Positions 5,100 through 49,831 of a DNA stretch of 64,000 bases are shown here, piece by piece. The notes beneath the pieces were generated by a model. It did no database searches and was not told the DNA's origin. It worked only from the letters and a program-made list of their open reading frames with translations. Origin of the DNA: Octopus sinensis (Eukaryota); NCBI RefSeq assembly GCF_006345805.1, contig NC_043020.1, positions 3,224,001-3,288,000 on the forward strand. The letters are read 5' to 3'. Numbering within the stretch: position 1 is the first letter of the stretch; every line of letters begins with the position of its first letter. Made by a program: the position numbers and the translations under genes.

Positions 5100-5916
5100 A
5101 TCAGCTGGCAGAATCATTAGCACACCAGGTGAAATGCTTAGCAGCATTTCTTCTGCCTCTACATTCTGGGTTCAAATTCCGCTGAGGTCGGCTTTGCCTT
5201 TCATCCTTTCAGGGTCGATTAAATAAGTACCAGTTCTGCACTGGGGTTATGCAGTTATGAGCTTGTTCCTGTAGGCGGGAGAGAGGTACCTTCCTGAGGT
5301 GCCCTTGGCAGTCAGGATGATCCAGGATCATTGGGGTTCCTTGGTTTCCCTTAGGTGATACTCTTCCACTTTGTTGGTGACTTTTGACATCAATTTTGTT
5401 GTTAATTGTTATTGTTTAATTTTCCATTGTTCTTCGTATTCTCCCAAATGTTTTTTTCTTTTTAAAATTCTTGCAGCCATTGTTATAATTATTGATTTCA
5501 GATTTTGGCCAAAGACTGGCAATTGTGGGGGGAGGGTACAAGTTGATTACATCAAGACCAATGCTCAACTGGTACTTATTTTATCAACCCCAGGAGGATG
5601 AAAGGCAAAGTCAACTCCAGTAGCATTTGAACTCAGAAAATAAAGTCAGAAGAAATGCTGCCAAGCAATTTTCCCAGCACGGTAATGGTTCTGCCAACTT
5701 GCTGTCCTTACCATTGCCAGAATTATTAAGAGTAGCTTTTCATCTGTTTTTGACATTCTGAGTTCAAATTCTGCCAAGGCTCACTTTGCCTTTCATCCTT
5801 TCAGGGTCAATAAAATAAGTACCAGTTAAGCACTGAGGTTCAGTGCCATTAAGTTAACCCCTTCTCCAAAATTTTTGGCCTCATGCCAAAATTTGAAGCC
5901 ATTATTATTATTATTA

Positions 5917-6104: not shown

Positions 6105-6108
6105 GTTG

Positions 6109-6219
6109 TTTTTTCTTTTTTTCCAGGTGAGTGAAATATTATTTTACCATATTTTAAAATAAAATATGATCTAAGTGAGGAGGGTCTTTTTTACATCACT
6201 GAAAAATGGTACTGTAAGT
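6109..6219 (+). promoter_or_regulatory. Putative recursive splice site
   Basis: 16 uninterrupted pyrimidines at 6109-6124 ending in CC, then AG|GTGAGT at 6126/6127. Downstream donors GTGAGG (6175) and GTAAGT (6214). Confidence 0.45.
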
Positions 6220-8416: not shown

Positions 8417-8830
8417 TATTTCTTTATTGCCCACAAGGGGCTAAACATAGAGGGGACAAACAAGGACAGACAAGGGGATTAAGTCGATTACATCGACCCC
8501 AGTGTGTAACTGGTACTTAATTTATCGACCCCGACAGGATGAAAGGCAAAGTCAACCTCGGTGGAATTTGAACTCAACGTAACGGCAGACAAAATACCTA
8601 TTTCTTTATTACCCACAAGGGGCTAAACATAGAGGGGACAAACATGGACAGACATAGGTATTAAATCGATTACATCGACCCCAGTGTGTAACTGGTACTT
8701 AATTTATCGACCCTGAGAGGATGAAAGGCAAAGTCAACCTCGGTAGGATTTGAACTCAGAGCATAACGGCAGACAAAATATCGCTAAGCATTTTGCCCAG
8801 CGTGCTAACGATTCTGCCAGCTCGCCACCT
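8417..8830 (-). mobile_element. SINE family B head-to-tail dimer
   Basis: A full copy at 8830-8599 is followed by a headless copy at 8598-8417. Junction aaagaaatag/gtattttgtctgcc on the minus strand. Confidence 0.8.
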
Positions 8831-15575: not shown

Positions 15576-16914
15576 GTAATATTGACAAATAATTCGTTAA
15601 AAATGAGGTTCTGATGACTTGGAGAATCCCTATTTCAGCTAAGTTTGGTCTTGTACAAATATAATAACGCAGTCTGGTCTACACAGAATTTGTCGTCAGA
15701 TTATATAAATTTATGTCAGTATTTTTTAATATAAACCATCTGGTAGCATAGATTTGACAACAGGATGTGTGCGTATAATCTGTGTAGAGGTTGATCCCCA
15801 AATGGTATGCAGTTGTATGGTGTACCAGTTCATGACAGAAGAGAGAAGCAGTCATGCTGTTGACCCACACATTTTCTTTACTTCCTCTAATTGGAGATTA
15901 CAGGGATTGGAAGGATTTAAGATAAACCAAGCTGGCTTTTAAATTGTTTCCTTTTCTCTATTTGTTCTTCCAAGTCTGTATGTTTTAGAATTTTTAAATG
16001 GTGTCTCCGTCTTGGATCTTGTGTTTTTATAAATAAAATAGGTACTCTTTGATGGGAATTGTTAGAGTGGTTAGAACTTAGTACAGATTTCTTTGCAGTC
16101 TGAGTTCAAATCCTACCAAGGTGAGCTTTACCTTTCATCATTTGGTATTGATAAAATATCACTTCAGGGCAGTGAATTGGTTGACTGATAAAATCATTGG
16201 ACAAGACTCCTTGTAGCATCTGTTCCAGCTCTTTGCATCTTGAGATCTGGTCTTTAGACACCTGTTGCAGGTGTCACTCCATTGCAAGTCCTTGAGGGTA
16301 TCTTGCTTCTTTCCTTCTGCCAGTTTCGGCATCATGGGTGCTGCTTTTCCCTCTTTGATCAAACTGTATAAATAAAAAAAGAAAGTAGTAATGTCATTTC
16401 TGTTACTATACTAGTCCTAAGTTTAATTTACCTGTTTCTATCCAGGTGGAATTAGATCTCTCACAATAACCTACTTAATGCCCTATAAACTCAGGAACTC
16501 TCTGTATAAACTTGGGTCATCCTCTTTATTTAAATGTCCTCGTTTCCATGTGTGTATGGGTTAGCCAGAATTCATTGAGGTAGATTTTCTGTGACCAGAT
16601 GCTCCACCTGTTTCCAAACAAAGTAATATTTCTCTGTGGCCAGAAAAGTTTTCACAGGAATGAAAAGCCTTGCCTGTATGACATACCTTTCATGTTCATT
16701 CACAACCATCTGATGATACACAAGAGTATACACATCGGATGATACTCATGCACGTATACACTTGCATATATATACATATGACAGGCTTCTTTTAGTTTCT
16801 GTCTACTAAATCCATCCCCAAGGCTTTTGTTGGTCTGGGGCTTTTGTTGAAGACATTTTTTCCAAAGTGTGACACAGTTGGACTGAACTCAAGACCACAT
16901 CGTTTTATATATAT

Positions 16915-26415: not shown

Positions 26416-26769
26416 TTAAGTTGGACCCCAAACTCTCCCCTTCCTCATCAGTTGTCCAATTCTTTGAATCCATCAGTTTATCAAATACAACTCAGAATAA
26501 ATAAATAAATGAAGATTGATGCTGAACAAACAAACATTTGAGTTCTAATTTCTTCAAATTATTTATTTATTCGTTTTCTATTTTTATTTACTTATTTTGA
26601 GGAATTAGCCAATTTAATATTCATGGCCAAATTCGGTTGGATATTAGCCATTGTTTACTATAACAACGCTCATTAAACTACTTTGCTAAATCAGCCTTTA
26701 ACGGCTTTTAACAGAGCTGCCTACCTTGAGACGGGAATATTTTGGCAAGGCTCTTTATTCTGCTCCTGC

Positions 26770-26875
26770 TCAACGTCTCTATCACCTCCACCTCTCTCTT
26801 TCCCTTTCTCTCTCTCTCTCTCTCTCTTCTCCCTTCTCCTCTCTCTCTCTTTCCCTTTCTCTCTCTCTTTCCCTT

Positions 26876-26908
<33 letters not shown>

Positions 26909-27147
26909 CCTTTCTCTCTCTCTTTCCCTTTCTCTCTCTCTCTTCTCTCTCTCTCTTTCCCTTTCTCTCTCTCTCTTCCTCTCTCTCTCTCCCTTTCTCT
27001 CTCTCTCTCCCTTTCTCTCTCTCTCTCCCTTTCTCTCTCTCTCTCCTCTCTCTCTCTCTCTTTCCCTTTCTCTCTCTCTCTCTCTCTCTCTCCCTTTCTC
27101 TCTCTCTCTCCTCTCTCTCTCCTTCTCTCTCTCCTCTCTCTCTCCTT

Positions 27148-27192
<45 letters not shown>

Positions 27193-27218
27193 CTCTCCCT
27201 TTCTCTCTCTCTCCTTCT

Positions 27219-27252
<34 letters not shown>

Positions 27253-27292
27253 TCCTTCTCTCTCTCTCTCTCTCCTTCTCTCTCTCTCTCAC
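26770..27292. repeat. ~520-bp polypyrimidine/polypurine tract, (CT)n with ttccctt interruptions
   Basis: Essentially only C and T on the + strand. It produces stop-free ORFs in several frames. Confidence 0.95.
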
Positions 27293-27740
27293 TCAATATG
27301 TCTCTGTAGATTCTCTCTGACACTTAAGTTGTTTGATTCTGCTATGTTAATTTGATTGTAAAGGGTGTGTTGTATGTGTGTGTGTGTCTGTTTGTGTATT
27401 TATGTTGTGTGTGTGTGTGTGTGTGTCTGTCTGTGTATGTACATAAGAGAGAGAATGTTATACATTTGTGTTGTGTGTATATAATTGTATGTATTTGTTT
27501 GTCTTGTGTTAAGGATTGTGTATGAGTGTGTGTTTAAAAACTTTGTAATCAGATTGAGAGGATAAAGACAATTGAGATGCCAATAAGGTTGACATTTCCT
27601 CTTCATTCTTTGACTTAAAATACCAGTAATTTACTGGTTCTTTCCATTTTGCTGTCTAAGTTAATATTGAGTATTTGTGTGGCAGTCTTTGATGTTTTGT
27701 TTTTAACTTGTCATATAGTGGATAGCCAGAAACACTAGTA

Positions 27741-31400: not shown

Positions 31401-31498
31401 CATTCCGTGGAGGTGGGCAAAATAGCAACACCTTTACCTGCAAAGAAGGAAAGTAGGAAAGAAACAAATTAATCTAATTGGACAACAAAACAACAATA

Positions 31499-39867: not shown

Positions 39868-39905
<38 letters not shown>

Positions 39906-39908
<3 letters not shown>

Positions 39909-40084
39909 GGTGGAGAGCTGGGCGAAATGCGTAGCCGTATTTTGTCTGCCATTACATTCTGAGTTCAAATTCCGCCGAATTGGGGTTGATAAATTAAGTA
40001 CCAGTTACGCACTGGGGTCGATGTAATCGACTTAATCTGTTTGTTTGTCCCCTCTGTGTTTAGCCCCTTATGGGTAGTAAAGAA

Positions 40085-40160
<76 letters not shown>

Positions 40161-40336
40161 GGTGGAGAGCTGGGCGAAATGCGTAGCCGTATTCCGTCTG
40201 CCATTACATTCTGAGTTCAAATTCCGCCGAATTGGGGTCGATAAATTAAGTACCAGTTACGCACTGGGGTCGATGTAATCGACTTAATCTGTTTGTTTGT
40301 CCCCTCTGTGTTTAGCCCCTTATGGGTAGTAAAGAA

Positions 40337-40339
<3 letters not shown>
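39906..40339 (+). mobile_element. Tandem duplication of an internally deleted SINE B (252-bp period)
   Basis: 39906-40087 and 40158-40339 share the same deletions and differ at three positions. (TA)n flanks and separates them. Confidence 0.85.
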
Positions 40340-40375
<36 letters not shown>

Positions 40376-40859
40376 TTCTTTTATATGTAAAGGTCTCTAA
40401 TAGAGAGAGGTTATCTGTGCAGCAAGGCTGGTCCTCTAGCTGTTGGTGTGCTGTTTCATATTGCTGCCCAGCACAGTAGCCATGGCCCCTATAATGATCT
40501 GATTAGGAAAGACAAATGTACTTTTAACACAATAATTATATCTTCTCTCTCTCTCTCTCTCCTCTTCCAATCACACACATTTTATTTTACATTTTCTTAT
40601 TTCTTTCATCATTATATTTTTTCCTTTTCTCTTTTTATTTTTTTTTTACTTTTCCCTTTGTTTTCTATTTTCTATTATTATTATTATTATTATTTAGTAG
40701 GTGGTGGTGGTGGGGGTGTTGTGATCGAACTGTTCTCATCTATCATGTAAACCAGATCAAAATCAGCTCAAATAATTCAATAAAAGATCTAAAGTGGGAA
40801 CAAGCCGAAACAAAATCATGGCTTACAACACACACACTCGCACACGGATATGTACACTT

Positions 40860-41100
40860 TTAAATATATATGCATCTATTTATATATATACATATATGTA
40901 TATATATATGTATATATTGTATATATATGAATATGTATATGTATATATATGTATATATATGAATATGTATATGTATATATATGTATATATATGAATATGT
41001 ATATGTATATATATGTATATATATGAATATGTATATATATGAATATGTATATATATGTATGTATGTATGTATATATATATGTATATATATATGTACATAC
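40860..41100. repeat. TA-derived minisatellite with 32-bp period
   Basis: The GAAT marker occurs at 40929, 40961, 40993, 41025 and 41041. Confidence 0.9.
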
Positions 41101-41377
41101 ATGCACATGCATGTCAACACACACACACACAAGTATGTATATGTATTATTAGATATACATCTATGTGTGTTCACTCTTTCATAGAACATACGCCAGTATG
41201 ACTGAAATGTTTTCTTTCGTGCTAATTCCACAATAATTAATAATTATGCTTCACTTTTGATGTCTTAACGATCTATCAATGAAGTGGAGTTGATTTCACT
41301 AATTCTTTCATTGTGAAATGTTCTATAATCATTTCTGCATTCTCAAGGAACTGACCGTACACGCATGTGTGCACAGT

Positions 41378-41411
<34 letters not shown>

Positions 41412-41512
41412 CTGCTTGAATATGTTTTGTGTGTGTGAATTTATTAAATGTTTTTGTGTGTTGTTTTTATATTGATTATGTATTATATATCCGTAGATAT
41501 GTATATTTTCAG

Positions 41513-41548
<36 letters not shown>

Positions 41549-43069
41549 GTGTGTATCTATAGACATATATGTATGTGTATATATATATATATATATATAT
41601 TTACATACACACACACATATACATACATATACACATGTGTGTATGTATGTATATATATACACACACACACTTTTACATATATATACACACACCCACTCAC
41701 ACACACACACACACAAAATAGTATTTTAGTCATAAATTAATGTTTGAATGAACTGAGAAAGTATTATCCATATCTAAGCTCATTTCTGTCCGTCATAGTG
41801 ATGAATATGAGAAGTAGGATCATAAAGATAAACTTAAGATGTGTCATAATACTTATATTTATAAGGTTTTTCTTCTTTTAATTATATTTAATTAATCTCA
41901 TTGTCTTTCTGTATTCTTTCTGTTTTTATAAAAAATTTAAGAAATTAGTTTTCCTTTTTTTTATCATTATCTTTATCATTCTCAATAAATGTTATTAATC
42001 TAAAGAAATCAGTGTTTCAATATTGACAAACGAGATTATCGTTAATGTTATTAATTTCCTGCAATGTTTATTTATGGTTCTTTTCATTCTGAGTTCAAAT
42101 CCCTCTGGTATTGAATTTGCCTTTTATCCGGTTAGGGTCAGTTAAATAAGTAACAGTCAAGTGCTGGGGTCAACTGAACCAACTGGTTCCACTTCCTAGT
42201 TTTTGTAGCCATGACCAAATGTTAGAAACCATTTGGATGGCATTCTGATTTAAGCACCACAGATAACTTATCGTAACTCCTTTTATTTTGGGGAATTTTT
42301 AGAAAATCTTTGCTAATTTTGTTTTACATGAAAGAACTCACATGATTATGCAAAAGAAACTTAATTTTAAACCCCCTCCCAACCCCCACCACAACCTGTA
42401 AATCCTAAAAGTTCCACACTTTTTTGAATTTTCTTTTTGAAATCAGTGTTTAAAATACAAAGAGTCCGAATACTTAAAACTCAGTTATTGGCTACCCTTG
42501 GGTACATCATCATTCCATTAAATGTGTTTATGAAGAGAAAAAAATATTGAGAAACATCAATGTCAGTAATGAAGAAATAAGGAAGGTATCAGGTGGTCAT
42601 GAAATGTACTAAAAACAATAGTTAAAATCATCCTTAAATCACACGCAAAGATTTTTCTTTTTTTTTTTGCATAATCATGAATTCCTATGTGTAGAAACAC
42701 ATTTGTAAAAATTTTCTGAAAATTCCAAAATATAAAAAAAGTTACAAGGGGGTTATATGGGGTGCTAAAAACAGAATTCCGCCATTATTTTGTCCTGGTA
42801 ATGATATTCTCCATTCATCCCTTCCTGGCGCAATAAAAGAAATTGTTATTGTTCTTCCCTCTGATCATTTATCATTTCATTGTTGTTCTGCTTGTATTAA
42901 ATTGTTAGATGTCAAACTGCATCCCACAACCACAATGTGATGTATCTGTGCCATTCCTCAGAGTTCCGAAGAATCAGGACATTCACCCTGATATCCAACA
43001 TCTTTAATCATTTACATTTCTTGCCACAGTCCCTAAAGTTATTATAATTGATATAATGGCAATTATTTT

Positions 43070-43316: not shown

Positions 43317-43560
43317 ATTGAGCGAGAGAACAGTGCATGCCTTCAAAGTGACACTGGGGTACAAATATACAAATCTCAATATGTCCATCATGACTACTTG
43401 TCTGATAAGGGTAGATCAGGCATGTGTATTACAATTAAAGGTGTGTAACATGGTGTCTCTCTTATTGGGATAAACAGCTTATGACTTTGCACATGTGGCT
43501 CAGAATTTTCTTTAGGTTGAGTTGGCCATCCTGCTCAAAAGTCCCTCAATAAGGGTTGTT
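43317..43560 (+). repeat. Dispersed repeat, copy 1 (unclassified)
   Basis: gagagaacagtgcatgcc.tcaaagtgacactggggtac...catcatgactac..gtctgataagggta is the reverse complement of 47270-47572. Confidence 0.7.
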
Positions 43561-43785
43561 TTACGTCAATATAAAACAGGTAAAATATTTTGGCCAGATA
43601 CACCTGGTTTAAATGCTTTACCATTTTTCTTCTCACTCTTTGCTGTCCAAGTTCAAATCCCACCTCGGTTAGCTTTGCCTCTCATCTTTCTGGGCTTGAT
43701 AAAATAAAGTACCATCATTGTATTTGCACCTTTGTATAGTTCATTATTTTTAAATGTCATCTATAATTATCATTTAAATAAACTG

Positions 43786-43903
43786 TTAACCAAATTTTTC
43801 TTTTTCTTTCTTTTGCAGGTAAGTTTTACTGAACACAAAAGTATGTTTTAAAAAATTTCAAAATCCCCAAAAAATGTGTTTGACGTAAAACACGTTGGTG
43901 AGT
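43786..43903 (+). promoter_or_regulatory. Putative recursive splice site (ratchet point) with 79-nt RS-exon
   Basis: Branch-like TTAAC at 43786-43790, 20 uninterrupted pyrimidines at 43795-43814, GCAG|GTAAGT at 43818/43819, and a downstream donor TTG|GTGAGT at 43898. Confidence 0.6.
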
Positions 43904-44048
43904 AGAATAATTTCTTTTTACCTATTGGCCATTCTTTGGAAAGTGAAGCTTTCATTGTCAGTTGCAGAGCATTCTGATTCTTCTACAAGGGCACTATTTT
44001 CAGACAATCTTTAGAGGTTCTATTTAATGATATCAACCGTAGTGATCT

Positions 44049-44099
<51 letters not shown>

Positions 44100-44941
44100 G
44101 CAATCTGCCATGCTACAACACTGTTCAGGGTGGCTGAACAGGTGCTATACCTTGCCAAAGTGCACCCTGTAACTATGCAGGACAGTCGTCACTCCATGAG
44201 GTATTTTCAAAATACCCGTACACCCAAGTCTTTTTTATCTTATCCCTCTGCACTCATATTTTTGCTATTTGCCTTGTGCCTTCAATTGAAAGACACCCTG
44301 TGGGTATTTACTCCGTACCTGTTTGTTCTTGACTTACACGTCAGTCTCATGCCAACCACCCTATCTGTTTTCAGTCATATTTCTTTACTTTTATTTATTT
44401 ATTTTATTTTTTTTTTAATGTCCCATTTGTTTCCACTTGTGAAACTTACCTACATATTGTTTTTCTTTTTCAACCTGGGTGCTTTACAGACGAGTGATAT
44501 CAACACTTGCTAAAGATGCCAAGCATAGGTCTAGAACCATGGATGATTATGTTCAAATTGGAAGGCCCTCTTCACTTTCTAACTAATGTTTCTTAACCAT
44601 TTTTAACCTTTGATTTTACACCCCTGTTTTACTAGAATGCACCCCCTCCTAACCATCTGATGTTTCAAAAAATCATATATTTTCATAGTTAAATATATTA
44701 GGAACCCTTTTTACTTGCTTCAGTCACCAGACTGTGGCCATGCTGGGGCACCATCTTGAATTTTTAGTCAAAAGAATCAATCCATATACTTATTTTATTT
44801 TTATTTTAAATCCTGGTACTACTTCTATTGGTCTCATTTGCCAAACTGCTAAGTCACAGGGATATAAACACCAATGCTGGTTGTTAAGCAGTTGTGAGGG
44901 ACAAAGACACACATACATCTATCTATTTATCTATCTATCTA

Positions 44942-48425: not shown

Positions 48426-48875
48426 AGGTGCAGGCGTGGCTGTATGGTAAGAAGTTTGCTTCCCAGCCACATGGTTCCAGGTTCAGTCCTACTATGTGGT
48501 ACCTTGTGCAAGTGTCTTCTTCTATAGCCTCAGGTTGAACAAGCCTTGTGAGTGGATGTGGTATACATAAAGTGAAAGAAAACCATTGTGTGCATGTGTG
48601 TGTGTATATATATATATATATAATCAAAATAAGAAACAAGGATATCCAAGGTAGTGTAGTACAATTGTTTCATGCTACTATTTGTGTGTGTGTTTGAAAG
48701 ACATAAATACGCACACACACACACATGACAGGCTTCCAAAAGTTTCTGTCTAGCATATCCACTCACAAGATATTGGTCAGCCCAGAGCTGTAGTAGAAGA
48801 TACTTGCCCAAGGTTCAGCACACTAAACCCCAAAACTACATGGTTGCAAAACGGGGTTCTTAACTATGCAGCCAT
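48426..48875. mobile_element. Inverted pair of SINE family A heads (48426-48590 +, 48724-48875 -)
   Basis: agccttgtgagtggatgtg versus atatccactcacaagatat, and gtgtcttcttctatagc versus gctgtagtagaagatac. Confidence 0.65.
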
Positions 48876-48982
48876 GGTTTAAAATACGAACCCCAAACTT
48901 TCTTTCTTTGCTTGACCTTTTCCAAACCTGCCATATTTTGCTTCCGATTCTTCATCTTATTGTCATTGTTGTTGTTTTTCAG

Positions 48983-49369
48983 AGACAGAGTTCATTGGGG
49001 AAGGAGCTGCAGTTACAGCTGGACCAGACACGGCAGTCGGTGAGCAACCGGACGGTTAGTGAAGAGGAGATGGACAACATGAAACATGAACAGGACAAAC
49101 AAAGCAAAGAACTCGTTATTTTACGGAAGACTGTGGAGGAGATGGAGATCCGAATTGCCACCCAGAAACAGACGTTGTCTGCGAGGGATGAGAGTATAAA
49201 GAAATTGTTAGAAATGTTACAGAGTAAAGGACTTATGGTGAAACAAATTGATGCTGACCGCGTAGAGATGGAAACTTTACGTAACACCGCCTTAGAAGAG
49301 GAGACGAAGAGGAGACAGTTGGAATTAGTTTTAGAGGAAAAAGCCAAAGAACTTTCAAAGAAAATAGAT
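48983..49369 (+). CDS. ERC1: Internal coding exon of ERC/ELKS/CAST (Bruchpilot-like) active-zone protein, 387 nt, phase 0/0
   Basis: Acceptor ttgttgtttttcAG (48981-48982) and donor GAT|GTAAGT (49370). The translation RQSSLGKELQLQLDQ...LVILRKTVEEMEIRIATQKQTLSARDESIKKLLEMLQSKG...KELSKKID contains the ERC family signature LRKTxEEMExRIxTQKQTLxARDESIKKLLEMLQSKG. The invertebrate gene is co-orthologous to ERC1 and ERC2. Confidence 0.95.
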
Positions 49370-49831
49370 GTAAGTAAACTGATCCGTATTTTCTCATCAT
49401 TTTCATGTCAGCTTAATCTATGGGCTTTGTTTATGCGTTTATTGGCTGCAGGATTTGTTCAGTGAAAGGTCTGGTTATATTATTAGAGCTGCTTCTAATT
49501 CAAACTTGAATTTTATTTCACTTGTGTGACACTGTTGCACATCAGTTGATAGATTTTACATTATCTGCAATTTATACCTCAGATCAAGGATTCAAATTTG
49601 TTTTGAGGTGACTCAGGTATATGGTGTCGACAAGCTGAAATAACAGCGAAATATTGATGGTCACTTTTCTCATTCATCTATGGAGCAATTTGTTTCATCT
49701 GCTTTGAAGTGTTCTCTGTTTTTCAACACTTAAAGGTATTTTCCCGGCATGAAATTCTGCAGCTTAATAAGTATATAAATAAAACCCATACCTTAAGTAT
49801 GTGACATCAGTAATGTTAACATTATTAGAAC

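What the first reader, a model, noticed from the sequence alone, without database searches (positions are those of the whole stretch)
43786..43903. Recursive-splicing ratchet point with RS-exon in the intron of a cephalopod active-zone gene
Seen: on the ERC strand, about 5.2 kb upstream of the ERC exon, there is a complete 3' splice site. It has a branch-like TTAAC with its A 29 nt upstream, an AG-free zone at 43740-43816, 20 straight pyrimidines and GCAG, and it is followed with zero spacing by a perfect 5' site GTAAGT. A second consensus donor (TTG|GTGAGT) lies 79 nt later. Established: this AG|GT arrangement plus a short downstream cryptic exon is the architecture of recursive splice sites in long Drosophila and vertebrate neuronal introns. 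Inference: the intron is removed stepwise. The 79-nt RS-exon is frameshifting and has an in-frame TAA, so switching to the distal donor would create a poison exon able to tune ERC levels. I am not aware of recursive splicing having been characterised in cephalopods.
Basis: partly seen in the sequence, partly recalled or inferred. Interest (0 to 1): 0.82.

Follow-up and report, generated by a model that had tools for sequence, protein, structure and literature searches.

The report
Candidate recursive splice site, cephalopod ERC intron
A very long intron of a cephalopod synapse gene (ERC/CAST) holds a textbook "acceptor directly followed by donor" signal, and a second one 38 kb upstream. Together they suggest the intron is removed in steps, as in flies and vertebrates, but no RNA or cross-species evidence could be obtained here.

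Summary

- **Context:** the site lies on the sense strand, 5,164 nt upstream of the only ERC/CAST exon in the window (48983-49369). The upstream intron is therefore at least 49 kb.
- **Not a repeat:** the region has no other copy in the window.
- **Chance:** simulations expect 0.01-0.03 such motifs per strand.
- **New finding:** an unrelated second site at 6126/6127 (pyrimidine tract, CCAG|GTGAGT) has its own consensus donor 87 nt downstream. The antisense strand has no full match.

This doubled "ratchet point plus cryptic out-of-frame exon" layout is best explained by stepwise (recursive) intron removal. Usage is inferred, not shown. Conservation and RNA junctions could not be tested with these tools.

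If real, this extends a known mechanism to a new animal group rather than revealing a new mechanism.

The parts
43786..43790 (+). Branch-point-like TTAAC (fits yUnAy); its A at 43789 lies 29 nt upstream of the acceptor G
   Evidence: sequence. Use as a branch point is inferred.
43795..43814 (+). Uninterrupted 20-nt pyrimidine tract, with TT at -5/-6 relative to the splice junction
43815..43818 (+). GCAG acceptor at the end of a 77-nt AG-free zone (43740-43816)
43819..43824 (+). GTAAGT donor directly abutting the acceptor: the candidate ratchet point, a 5' splice site regenerated after the first ligation
   Evidence: It is the only AGGTAAGT on the + strand of the window.
43819..43897 (+). 79-nt candidate cryptic RS-exon; stops in all three frames, and TAA at codon 11 in the ERC frame
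43898..43903 (+). GTGAGT donor (TTG|GTGAGT) that would define the RS-exon
48983..49369 (+). The only ERC/ELKS/CAST coding exon in the window (387 nt, phase 0). Acceptor ttgtttttcag| has only 14 of 20 pyrimidines; donor is GAT|gtaagt
6105..6126 (+). Second site: pyrimidine tract (17 of 20) and CCAG acceptor, TT at -5/-6, just after a SINE-like element and its (ATT)n tail
6127..6213 (+). Second site: GTGAGT donor at position 0 and an 87-nt candidate RS-exon, with an in-frame TAA at codon 12 by reading the sequence
   Evidence: No sequence similarity to the 43819 unit beyond the motif.
6214..6219 (+). Second site: downstream donor ACT|GTAAGT
43626..43714 (+). SINE-like repeat fragment just upstream of the candidate. 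It is not part of it, but it bounds the unique segment 43715-44048.
   Evidence: copies at 16090-16158 +, 5570-5655 -, 8693-8756 -

Best explanation
43818|43819 is an intronic recursive splice site (ratchet point) of the ERC/CAST pre-mRNA, and 6126|6127 is a second one in the same intron of at least 49 kb.

**Proposed mechanism**
1. While the intron is transcribed, the strong acceptor (branch-like TTAAC, 20-nt pyrimidine tract, GCAG) and the donor 79 nt downstream (TTG|GTGAGT) are recognised together as a short exon.
2. The upstream exon, or the previously regenerated donor at 6127, is ligated to 43819.
3. This places GTAAGT directly after exon sequence and recreates a consensus 5' splice site. 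That site outcompetes the distal donor.
4. The 79-nt unit and the last 5.2 kb are then removed by splicing to the real acceptor at 48982.

The mRNA is the same as after one-step splicing.

**Shown:** the sequence elements, their strand, the intron context, and their improbability by chance.
**Inferred:** every splicing step.
For: - **Motif:** exact juxtaposed acceptor|donor with all accessory elements.
- **Host gene:** same strand as the ERC exon. No other ERC exon was found by tblastn with 11 long ERC proteins or by a 19-protein profile HMM. The exon scored E=2e-43 and the next best hit had E>3. The upstream intron is therefore at least 48,982 nt.
- **Base rate in flies:** 63% of introns over 40 kb carry a high-confidence recursive site.
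- **Chance expectation:** 0.01-0.03 motifs per strand against 2 observed on the sense strand and 0 on the antisense strand.
- **Acceptor-like sites:** of 57 strong acceptor-like sites on +, 2 are followed by GTRAGT. Poisson P(>=2) is 3e-4 to 2.4e-3.
- **Downstream donors:** both sites also have a consensus donor 79 and 87 nt downstream, where P is about 0.03-0.05 each.
- **Pseudo-exons:** of the 4 + strand pseudo-exons (strong acceptor plus GTRAGT within 25-250 nt), 2 start with GTRAGT.
- **Independence:** the two units share no sequence beyond the motif, and the 43819 unit has no other copy in the window.
- **Fly-type marks:** TT at -5/-6, reported for 196 of 197 fly ratchet points (met). The pyrimidine tract is stronger than that of the gene's real acceptor, 20 of 20 against 14 of 20. 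The cryptic exon is out of frame and stop-containing, as described for fly RS-exons.
Against: - No RNA evidence of any kind: no junction reads, lariats or saw-tooth coverage.
- No test of conservation, which is a hallmark of fly ratchet points.
- The upstream exon is not in the window, so the regenerated 5' splice site cannot be fully scored and the true intron length is unknown.
- Thresholds for the statistics were set after seeing the first site.
- The first site was picked by a reader scanning for striking motifs. Across a genome I take to be gigabase-sized (my assumption), single chance occurrences of the full motif are expected.
- The antisense strand has a near-hit (GCAG|GTAAAG at 31439, 19 of 20 pyrimidines, donor at +227). 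Relaxed versions of the pattern therefore do arise without sense-strand function.
- In vertebrates many good AGGT motifs are not used.
Confidence: 0.5

Rival explanations
1. Chance or by-product motif that has no role. The T-rich sense strand of a long intron throws up many acceptor-like tracts, and one happens to be followed by GTAAGT. It is ignored by the spliceosome or used only as splicing noise.
For: - The + strand has 57 strong acceptor-like sites and 45 pyrimidine runs of at least 15 nt.
- AGGTRAGT occurs at about chance frequency overall, 4 per strand.
- There is an antisense near-hit at 31439.
- The site was selected post hoc by a reader.
- Conservation is untested.
Against: - The joint architecture is expected about 1e-3 times per strand-window yet appears twice on the sense strand, in unrelated sequence, and never in full on the antisense strand.
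- The background used is conservative, because a 500-nt (CT)n array at 26792-27294 inflates pyrimidine-window counts.
- By inference, an acceptor this much stronger than the real one, paired with a consensus donor 79 nt away, is unlikely to be invisible to the spliceosome.
Confidence: 0.3
2. The site is the acceptor of an expressed alternative exon (43819-43897) that appears in some mature ERC transcripts. This could be a regulated stop-containing 'poison' cassette or an 'expressed RS-exon', rather than a silent ratchet point.
For: - A complete exon-like unit is present, with a strong acceptor and a consensus donor 79 nt on.
- Mammals are reported to have many expressed RS-exons and few fully silent ratchet points.
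Against: - Stops in all three frames rule out a coding cassette.
- An ordinary exon starting with GTAAGT has a probability of about 1e-3, and the second unit starts with GTGAGT as well.
- The position-0 donor is a full consensus, which in fly experiments drives skipping.
- No transcript data are available.
Confidence: 0.13
3. The splice signals belong to a different + strand transcript (an unannotated non-coding RNA or nested gene), or are relics carried in by a transposable element. For example, the T-tract could be the antisense poly(A) tail of a retroposon.
For: - SINE-like fragments lie directly upstream of both sites.
- The window is repeat-rich.
- The upstream ERC exon is not seen in the window.
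Against: - The segment 43715-44048 has no second copy in 64 kb.
- ORF fragments from it hit nothing in 5.8 billion proteins.
- No Pfam domain or other coding ORF was found nearby.
- No Rfam family matches at the site.
- A transposable-element origin would not exclude use as a recursive site.
Confidence: 0.07

Closest known systems
Drosophila intronic ratchet points with cryptic RS-exons (Ubx, kuz, Bx; Burnette 2005, Duff 2015, Joseph 2018, Pai 2018)
   Same: - (Y)n-NCAG|GTAAGT core, TT at -5/-6, and an unusually strong pyrimidine tract.
- Sense strand of an intron over 40 kb, with more than one site in that intron.
- A short downstream donor defines a cryptic exon that is out of frame or stop-containing.

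   Different: - The phylum differs (mollusc).
- Conservation and constitutive use are defining features in flies but are untested here.
- The last segment is only 5.2 kb, whereas fly sites tend towards intron midpoints. The true intron length here is unknown.
Vertebrate recursive splice sites and RS-exons in long neuronal genes (Sibley 2015; human catalogues, PMC6110456 and bioRxiv 10.64898/2026.09.10.750672)
   Same: - The host is a neuronal gene with very long introns.
- AG|GT core with an upstream pyrimidine tract.
- Exon definition through a downstream 5' splice site.
- Inclusion would introduce a premature stop.
   Different: - Vertebrate sites often have weaker motifs, and many RS-exons are expressed.
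- No vertebrate ERC1/ERC2 recursive site turned up in the literature searched.
Ordinary intronic pseudo-exons or decoy splice sites
   Same: A strong acceptor plus a donor within 25-250 nt, inside an intron. The window has 4 such units on + and 5 on -.
   Different: Only the two candidate units start with a consensus donor at position 0.

Membership tests
Intronic recursive splice site (ratchet point with cryptic RS-exon) | [quoted passage not shown] | tested here: met
   GCAG|GTAAGT at 43815-43824. It is the only AGGTAAGT on the + strand.
Intronic recursive splice site (ratchet point with cryptic RS-exon) | Prominent pyrimidine tract with TT at -5/-6 (196 of 197 fly sites) | tested here: met
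   20 of 20 pyrimidines and TT at -6/-5. The gene's real acceptor has 14 of 20.
Intronic recursive splice site (ratchet point with cryptic RS-exon) | Lies on the transcribed strand inside a long intron | tested here: met
   Same strand as the ERC exon. No other ERC exon is detectable in 1-48982, so the intron is at least 49 kb. Caveat: the upstream exon itself was not seen.
Intronic recursive splice site (ratchet point with cryptic RS-exon) | Downstream 5' splice site defining a short cryptic exon, usually out of frame | tested here: met
   TTG|GTGAGT at +79. The length 79 is not a multiple of 3, and there is an in-frame TAA.
Intronic recursive splice site (ratchet point with cryptic RS-exon) | Motif conserved well above flanking intron in related species | not testable with these tools
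   Three routes were tried. Logan contigs of a related species cover only 48713-49782. An ORF-fragment search around the site found nothing. An exact 22-mer scan of metagenome contigs found nothing. The cuttlefish ERC gene range was too long for its DNA to be returned.
Intronic recursive splice site (ratchet point with cryptic RS-exon) | Splicing intermediates: exon-to-ratchet junction reads, segment lariats, saw-tooth nascent RNA coverage | not testable with these tools
   No RNA-seq access. No transcript-derived ERC protein of this species is in the protein database.
Expressed RS-exon or poison cassette exon | Exon present in some mature transcripts, with abundance rising when NMD is blocked | not testable with these tools
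   No transcript data.
ERC/ELKS/CAST active-zone protein gene (host gene) | Significant match to Pfam PF10174 (Cast) and to ERC proteins of other animals | tested here: met
   - PF10174: E=4.3e-23, 81.9 bits against a cut-off of 29.1.
- 184 homologues carry PF10174.
- 84% identity to the ERC model of the cuttlefish Sepia pharaonis, GCA_903632075.3.

The most novel reading that the evidence does not exclude
Cephalopods, whose neuronal genes have very long introns, routinely use fly-type hard-wired ratchet points, several per intron. In ERC the choice between the position-0 donor and the distal donor of the 79-nt (and 87-nt) unit would be regulated to produce stop-containing transcripts that set active-zone protein levels.
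Probability: 0.12. Interest if true: 0.6.

Novelty: new member of a known kind. Interest (0 to 1): 0.42.

Why it matters
Recursive splicing has been documented in flies and vertebrates, and tested in lungfish. Full-text searches found nothing for cephalopods or octopus.

A confirmed pair of ratchet points in a mollusc would show that the fly-type architecture (hard-wired site plus cryptic exon) occurs in a lophotrochozoan. It would also give a simple sequence rule for a genome-wide survey of cephalopod long neuronal introns. It would not reveal a new mechanism.

The practical value here is a sharply defined, cheap test: two exact junctions to look for in brain total RNA.

Tried and rejected
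The sequence there is an isolated GTAAGT with no ERC-like ORF. tblastn and a profile HMM find no exon anywhere in 1-48982. Rejected.
2. **Repeat origin.** Self-BLAST of 43400-44400 finds SINE-like copies only for 43626-43714 and 43400-43522, and microsatellite hits at 44049-44102. It finds nothing for 43715-44040.
3. **Common origin of the two sites.** Their alignment shows no similarity beyond the motif.
4. **Conservation through called ORFs.** Concatenated stop-free fragments around the site were searched against the 5.8-billion-protein database. 1,486 word candidates were collected and none scored E<=10.
5. **Conservation through annotated relatives.** The ERC gene of Sepia pharaonis spans about 122 kb and no DNA was returned. 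P0123 is not on record.
6. **Exact 22-mer scan of metagenome contigs.** No hits.
7. **Non-coding RNA at the site.** Rfam gives only sub-threshold microsatellite-type miRNA matches at the (TA)n array. No tRNA genes were found.
8. **Nested coding genes.** Eight long ORFs have no Pfam domain.
9. **Known recursive sites in ERC1/ERC2.** None found in the searched literature.
10. **Third protein-database search around site 6127.** Not spent. The unique segment there is only about 330 nt between microsatellites, so success was very unlikely.

Full report
**1. The observation.**
- TTAAC at 43786-43790, with its A 29 nt before the acceptor G.
- No AG between 43740 and 43816.
- Twenty uninterrupted pyrimidines at 43795-43814.
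- GCAG at 43815-43818, abutted without spacing by GTAAGT at 43819-43824.
- A second donor TTG|GTGAGT whose last upstream base is 43897, giving a 79-nt unit.
- All three frames of that unit contain stops.

The ERC exon starts in phase 0. In that frame the unit reads VSFTEHKSMF followed by TAA.

**2. Host gene and context.**
- The ORF spanning 48866-49465 contains an exon bounded by ttgtttttcag|AGA at 48982/48983 and GAT|gtaagt at 49369/49370.
- Its 129 residues match Pfam PF10174 (Cast) at E=4.3e-23.
- They also match 184 PF10174 proteins.
- The best named relative is the ERC gene model of the cuttlefish Sepia pharaonis, at 84% identity. That gene model alone spans about 122 kb.
- Genomic contigs of an unnamed close relative are 98% identical in protein and 86% in DNA over 1,090 nt of exon plus flanking intron.
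- tblastn with 11 long ERC proteins detects only this one exon. So does a profile HMM of 19 ERC proteins searched against every six-frame stop-free segment. The exon scores E=2e-43 at HMM positions 232-357 of 1002, and everything else has E>3.

About 230 residues of ERC must be encoded upstream. The intron containing 43819 therefore extends at least from the window start, which makes it at least 48,982 nt. The downstream intron is at least 14.6 kb.

**3. Is it a repeat or another kind of element?**
- Self-BLAST shows a SINE-like fragment at 43626-43714 and a (TA)17 microsatellite at 44061-44094.
- The 334-nt segment between them, which holds the candidate, has no other copy in the window.
- Rfam gives only sub-threshold microsatellite artefacts.
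- No tRNA genes were found.
- No Pfam domains were found in neighbouring ORFs.

**4. Chance.**
- AGGTRAGT occurs four times on each strand, about the level expected.
- Requiring at least 17 of 20 pyrimidines upstream leaves two sites on the sense strand and none on the antisense strand.
- Markov simulations of order 1, 3 and 5 give 0.01-0.03 such sites per strand.
- The sense strand has 57 strong acceptor-like sites (at least 16 of 20 pyrimidines plus YAG). Two of these being followed by GTRAGT has Poisson P between 3e-4 and 2.4e-3, depending on the background used.
- The background is conservative, because a 500-nt (CT)n array at 26792-27294 inflates pyrimidine-rich windows.

**5. A second site.**
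- At 6105-6126 the sequence is GTTGTTTTTTCTTTTTTTCCAG. It is followed directly by GTGAGT at 6127, with a consensus donor ACT|GTAAGT at 6214. This gives an 87-nt unit.
- By reading the sequence, that unit also has an in-frame TAA at codon 12.
- Only 3-5% of sense-strand positions have a GTRAGT donor 30-100 or 30-150 nt downstream. Both sites do, at 79 and 87 nt.
- Of the four sense-strand pseudo-exons (strong acceptor plus GTRAGT within 25-250 nt), two start with a consensus donor. None of the five antisense ones does.
- The closest antisense case is 31439, GCAG|GTAAAG, which lacks the +5 G.
- The two units are unrelated in sequence.
- Treated as an independent replicate of a pattern defined on the first site, the second site has an expectation of roughly 2-3.5e-3 (my arithmetic).

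**6. Comparison with known recursive sites.**
- Fly ratchet points are juxtaposed acceptor|donor motifs in the longest introns.
- 63% of fly introns over 40 kb have one.
- They require a cryptic RS-exon that is poorly conserved, generally out of frame and always skipped, because the ratchet-point donor outcompetes the distal donor.

Both sites here have TT at -6/-5. The 43819 site has a far stronger pyrimidine tract than the bona fide acceptor at 48982, 20 of 20 against 14 of 20. Both cryptic units contain in-frame stops.

Two defining features, conservation and splicing intermediates, could not be tested.

**7. Mechanism proposed (inferred).**
1. Exon definition occurs across 43819-43897.
2. 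The upstream exon, or the donor regenerated at 6127, is ligated to 43819.
3. This reconstitutes a consensus GTAAGT donor.
4. The remaining 5.2 kb is removed by splicing to 48982.

By inference, an acceptor stronger than the real one, lying 5 kb upstream of it and paired with a good donor, would otherwise be a dangerous decoy. The position-0 donor neutralises it. Regulated inclusion as a poison exon is possible, but nothing here supports it.

**8. Verdict.**
- I put about 0.5 on real recursive use, 0.3 on a functionless motif, and the rest on an expressed alternative exon or a foreign or relic origin.
- Full-text searches found no report of recursive splicing in cephalopods or octopus.
- If true, this is a new member of a known kind in a new phylum, not a new mechanism.

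Noticed in passing
window 6105-6219 (+): A second complete ratchet-point-like unit: pyrimidine tract, CCAG|GTGAGT at 6126/6127, and downstream donor ACT|GTAAGT at 6214 (an 87-nt unit). It lies 37.7 kb upstream of the reported site and directly after a SINE-like element and its (ATT)n tail.
   Followed up: yes
window 31439 (- strand): An antisense near-hit: TTCTTTCCTACTTTCCTTCTTTGCAG|GTAAAGGT (19 of 20 pyrimidines), with a GTRAGT donor 227 nt downstream. It lacks the +5 G. It serves as a control showing that relaxed versions of the pattern occur off the ERC strand.
   Followed up: partly
window 5211, 5803, 43188 (+); 18950, 8714 (-): Copies of a SINE-like repeat carry a built-in acceptor-like sequence, CTTTGCCTTTCATCCTTTCAG|GGTC(G/A)AT. 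It accounts for several of the 'strong acceptor-like' sites and is a possible source of exonisation.
   Followed up: no
window 26792-27294: A roughly 500-nt imperfect (CT)n microsatellite (257 copies, 77% matches). It produces multi-frame ORFs on both strands at 26683-27355 and a sharp composition skew. It also inflates pyrimidine-run statistics.
   Followed up: partly
window 39873-40376 and 40864-41092: A 252-nt unit is duplicated in tandem (98% identical). It contains (TA)n and a SINE-like 'GAGTTCAAATTCCGCC...GGGTCGATAA' segment, followed by long AT-rich microsatellites. GC falls to 0.29 in 40001-42000.
   Followed up: no
window 44049-44102: The (TG)n(TA)17 microsatellite gives sub-threshold Rfam matches to mir-297, mir-466 and mir-1277 (46 bits against a gathering score of 90). 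These are low-complexity artefacts, not miRNA genes.
   Followed up: yes
window 48960-48982: The genuine ERC exon acceptor has only 14 of 20 pyrimidines. That is weaker than 57 other acceptor-like sites on the same strand of the window.
   Followed up: partly
L001-L004 (Logan SRR11869385/390/391/394), aligned to window 48713-49782: Genomic contigs of a closely related, unnamed species are 86% identical in DNA over exon plus flanking intron and 98% in exon protein. This gives a rough neutral-divergence yardstick for a future conservation test.
   Followed up: partly
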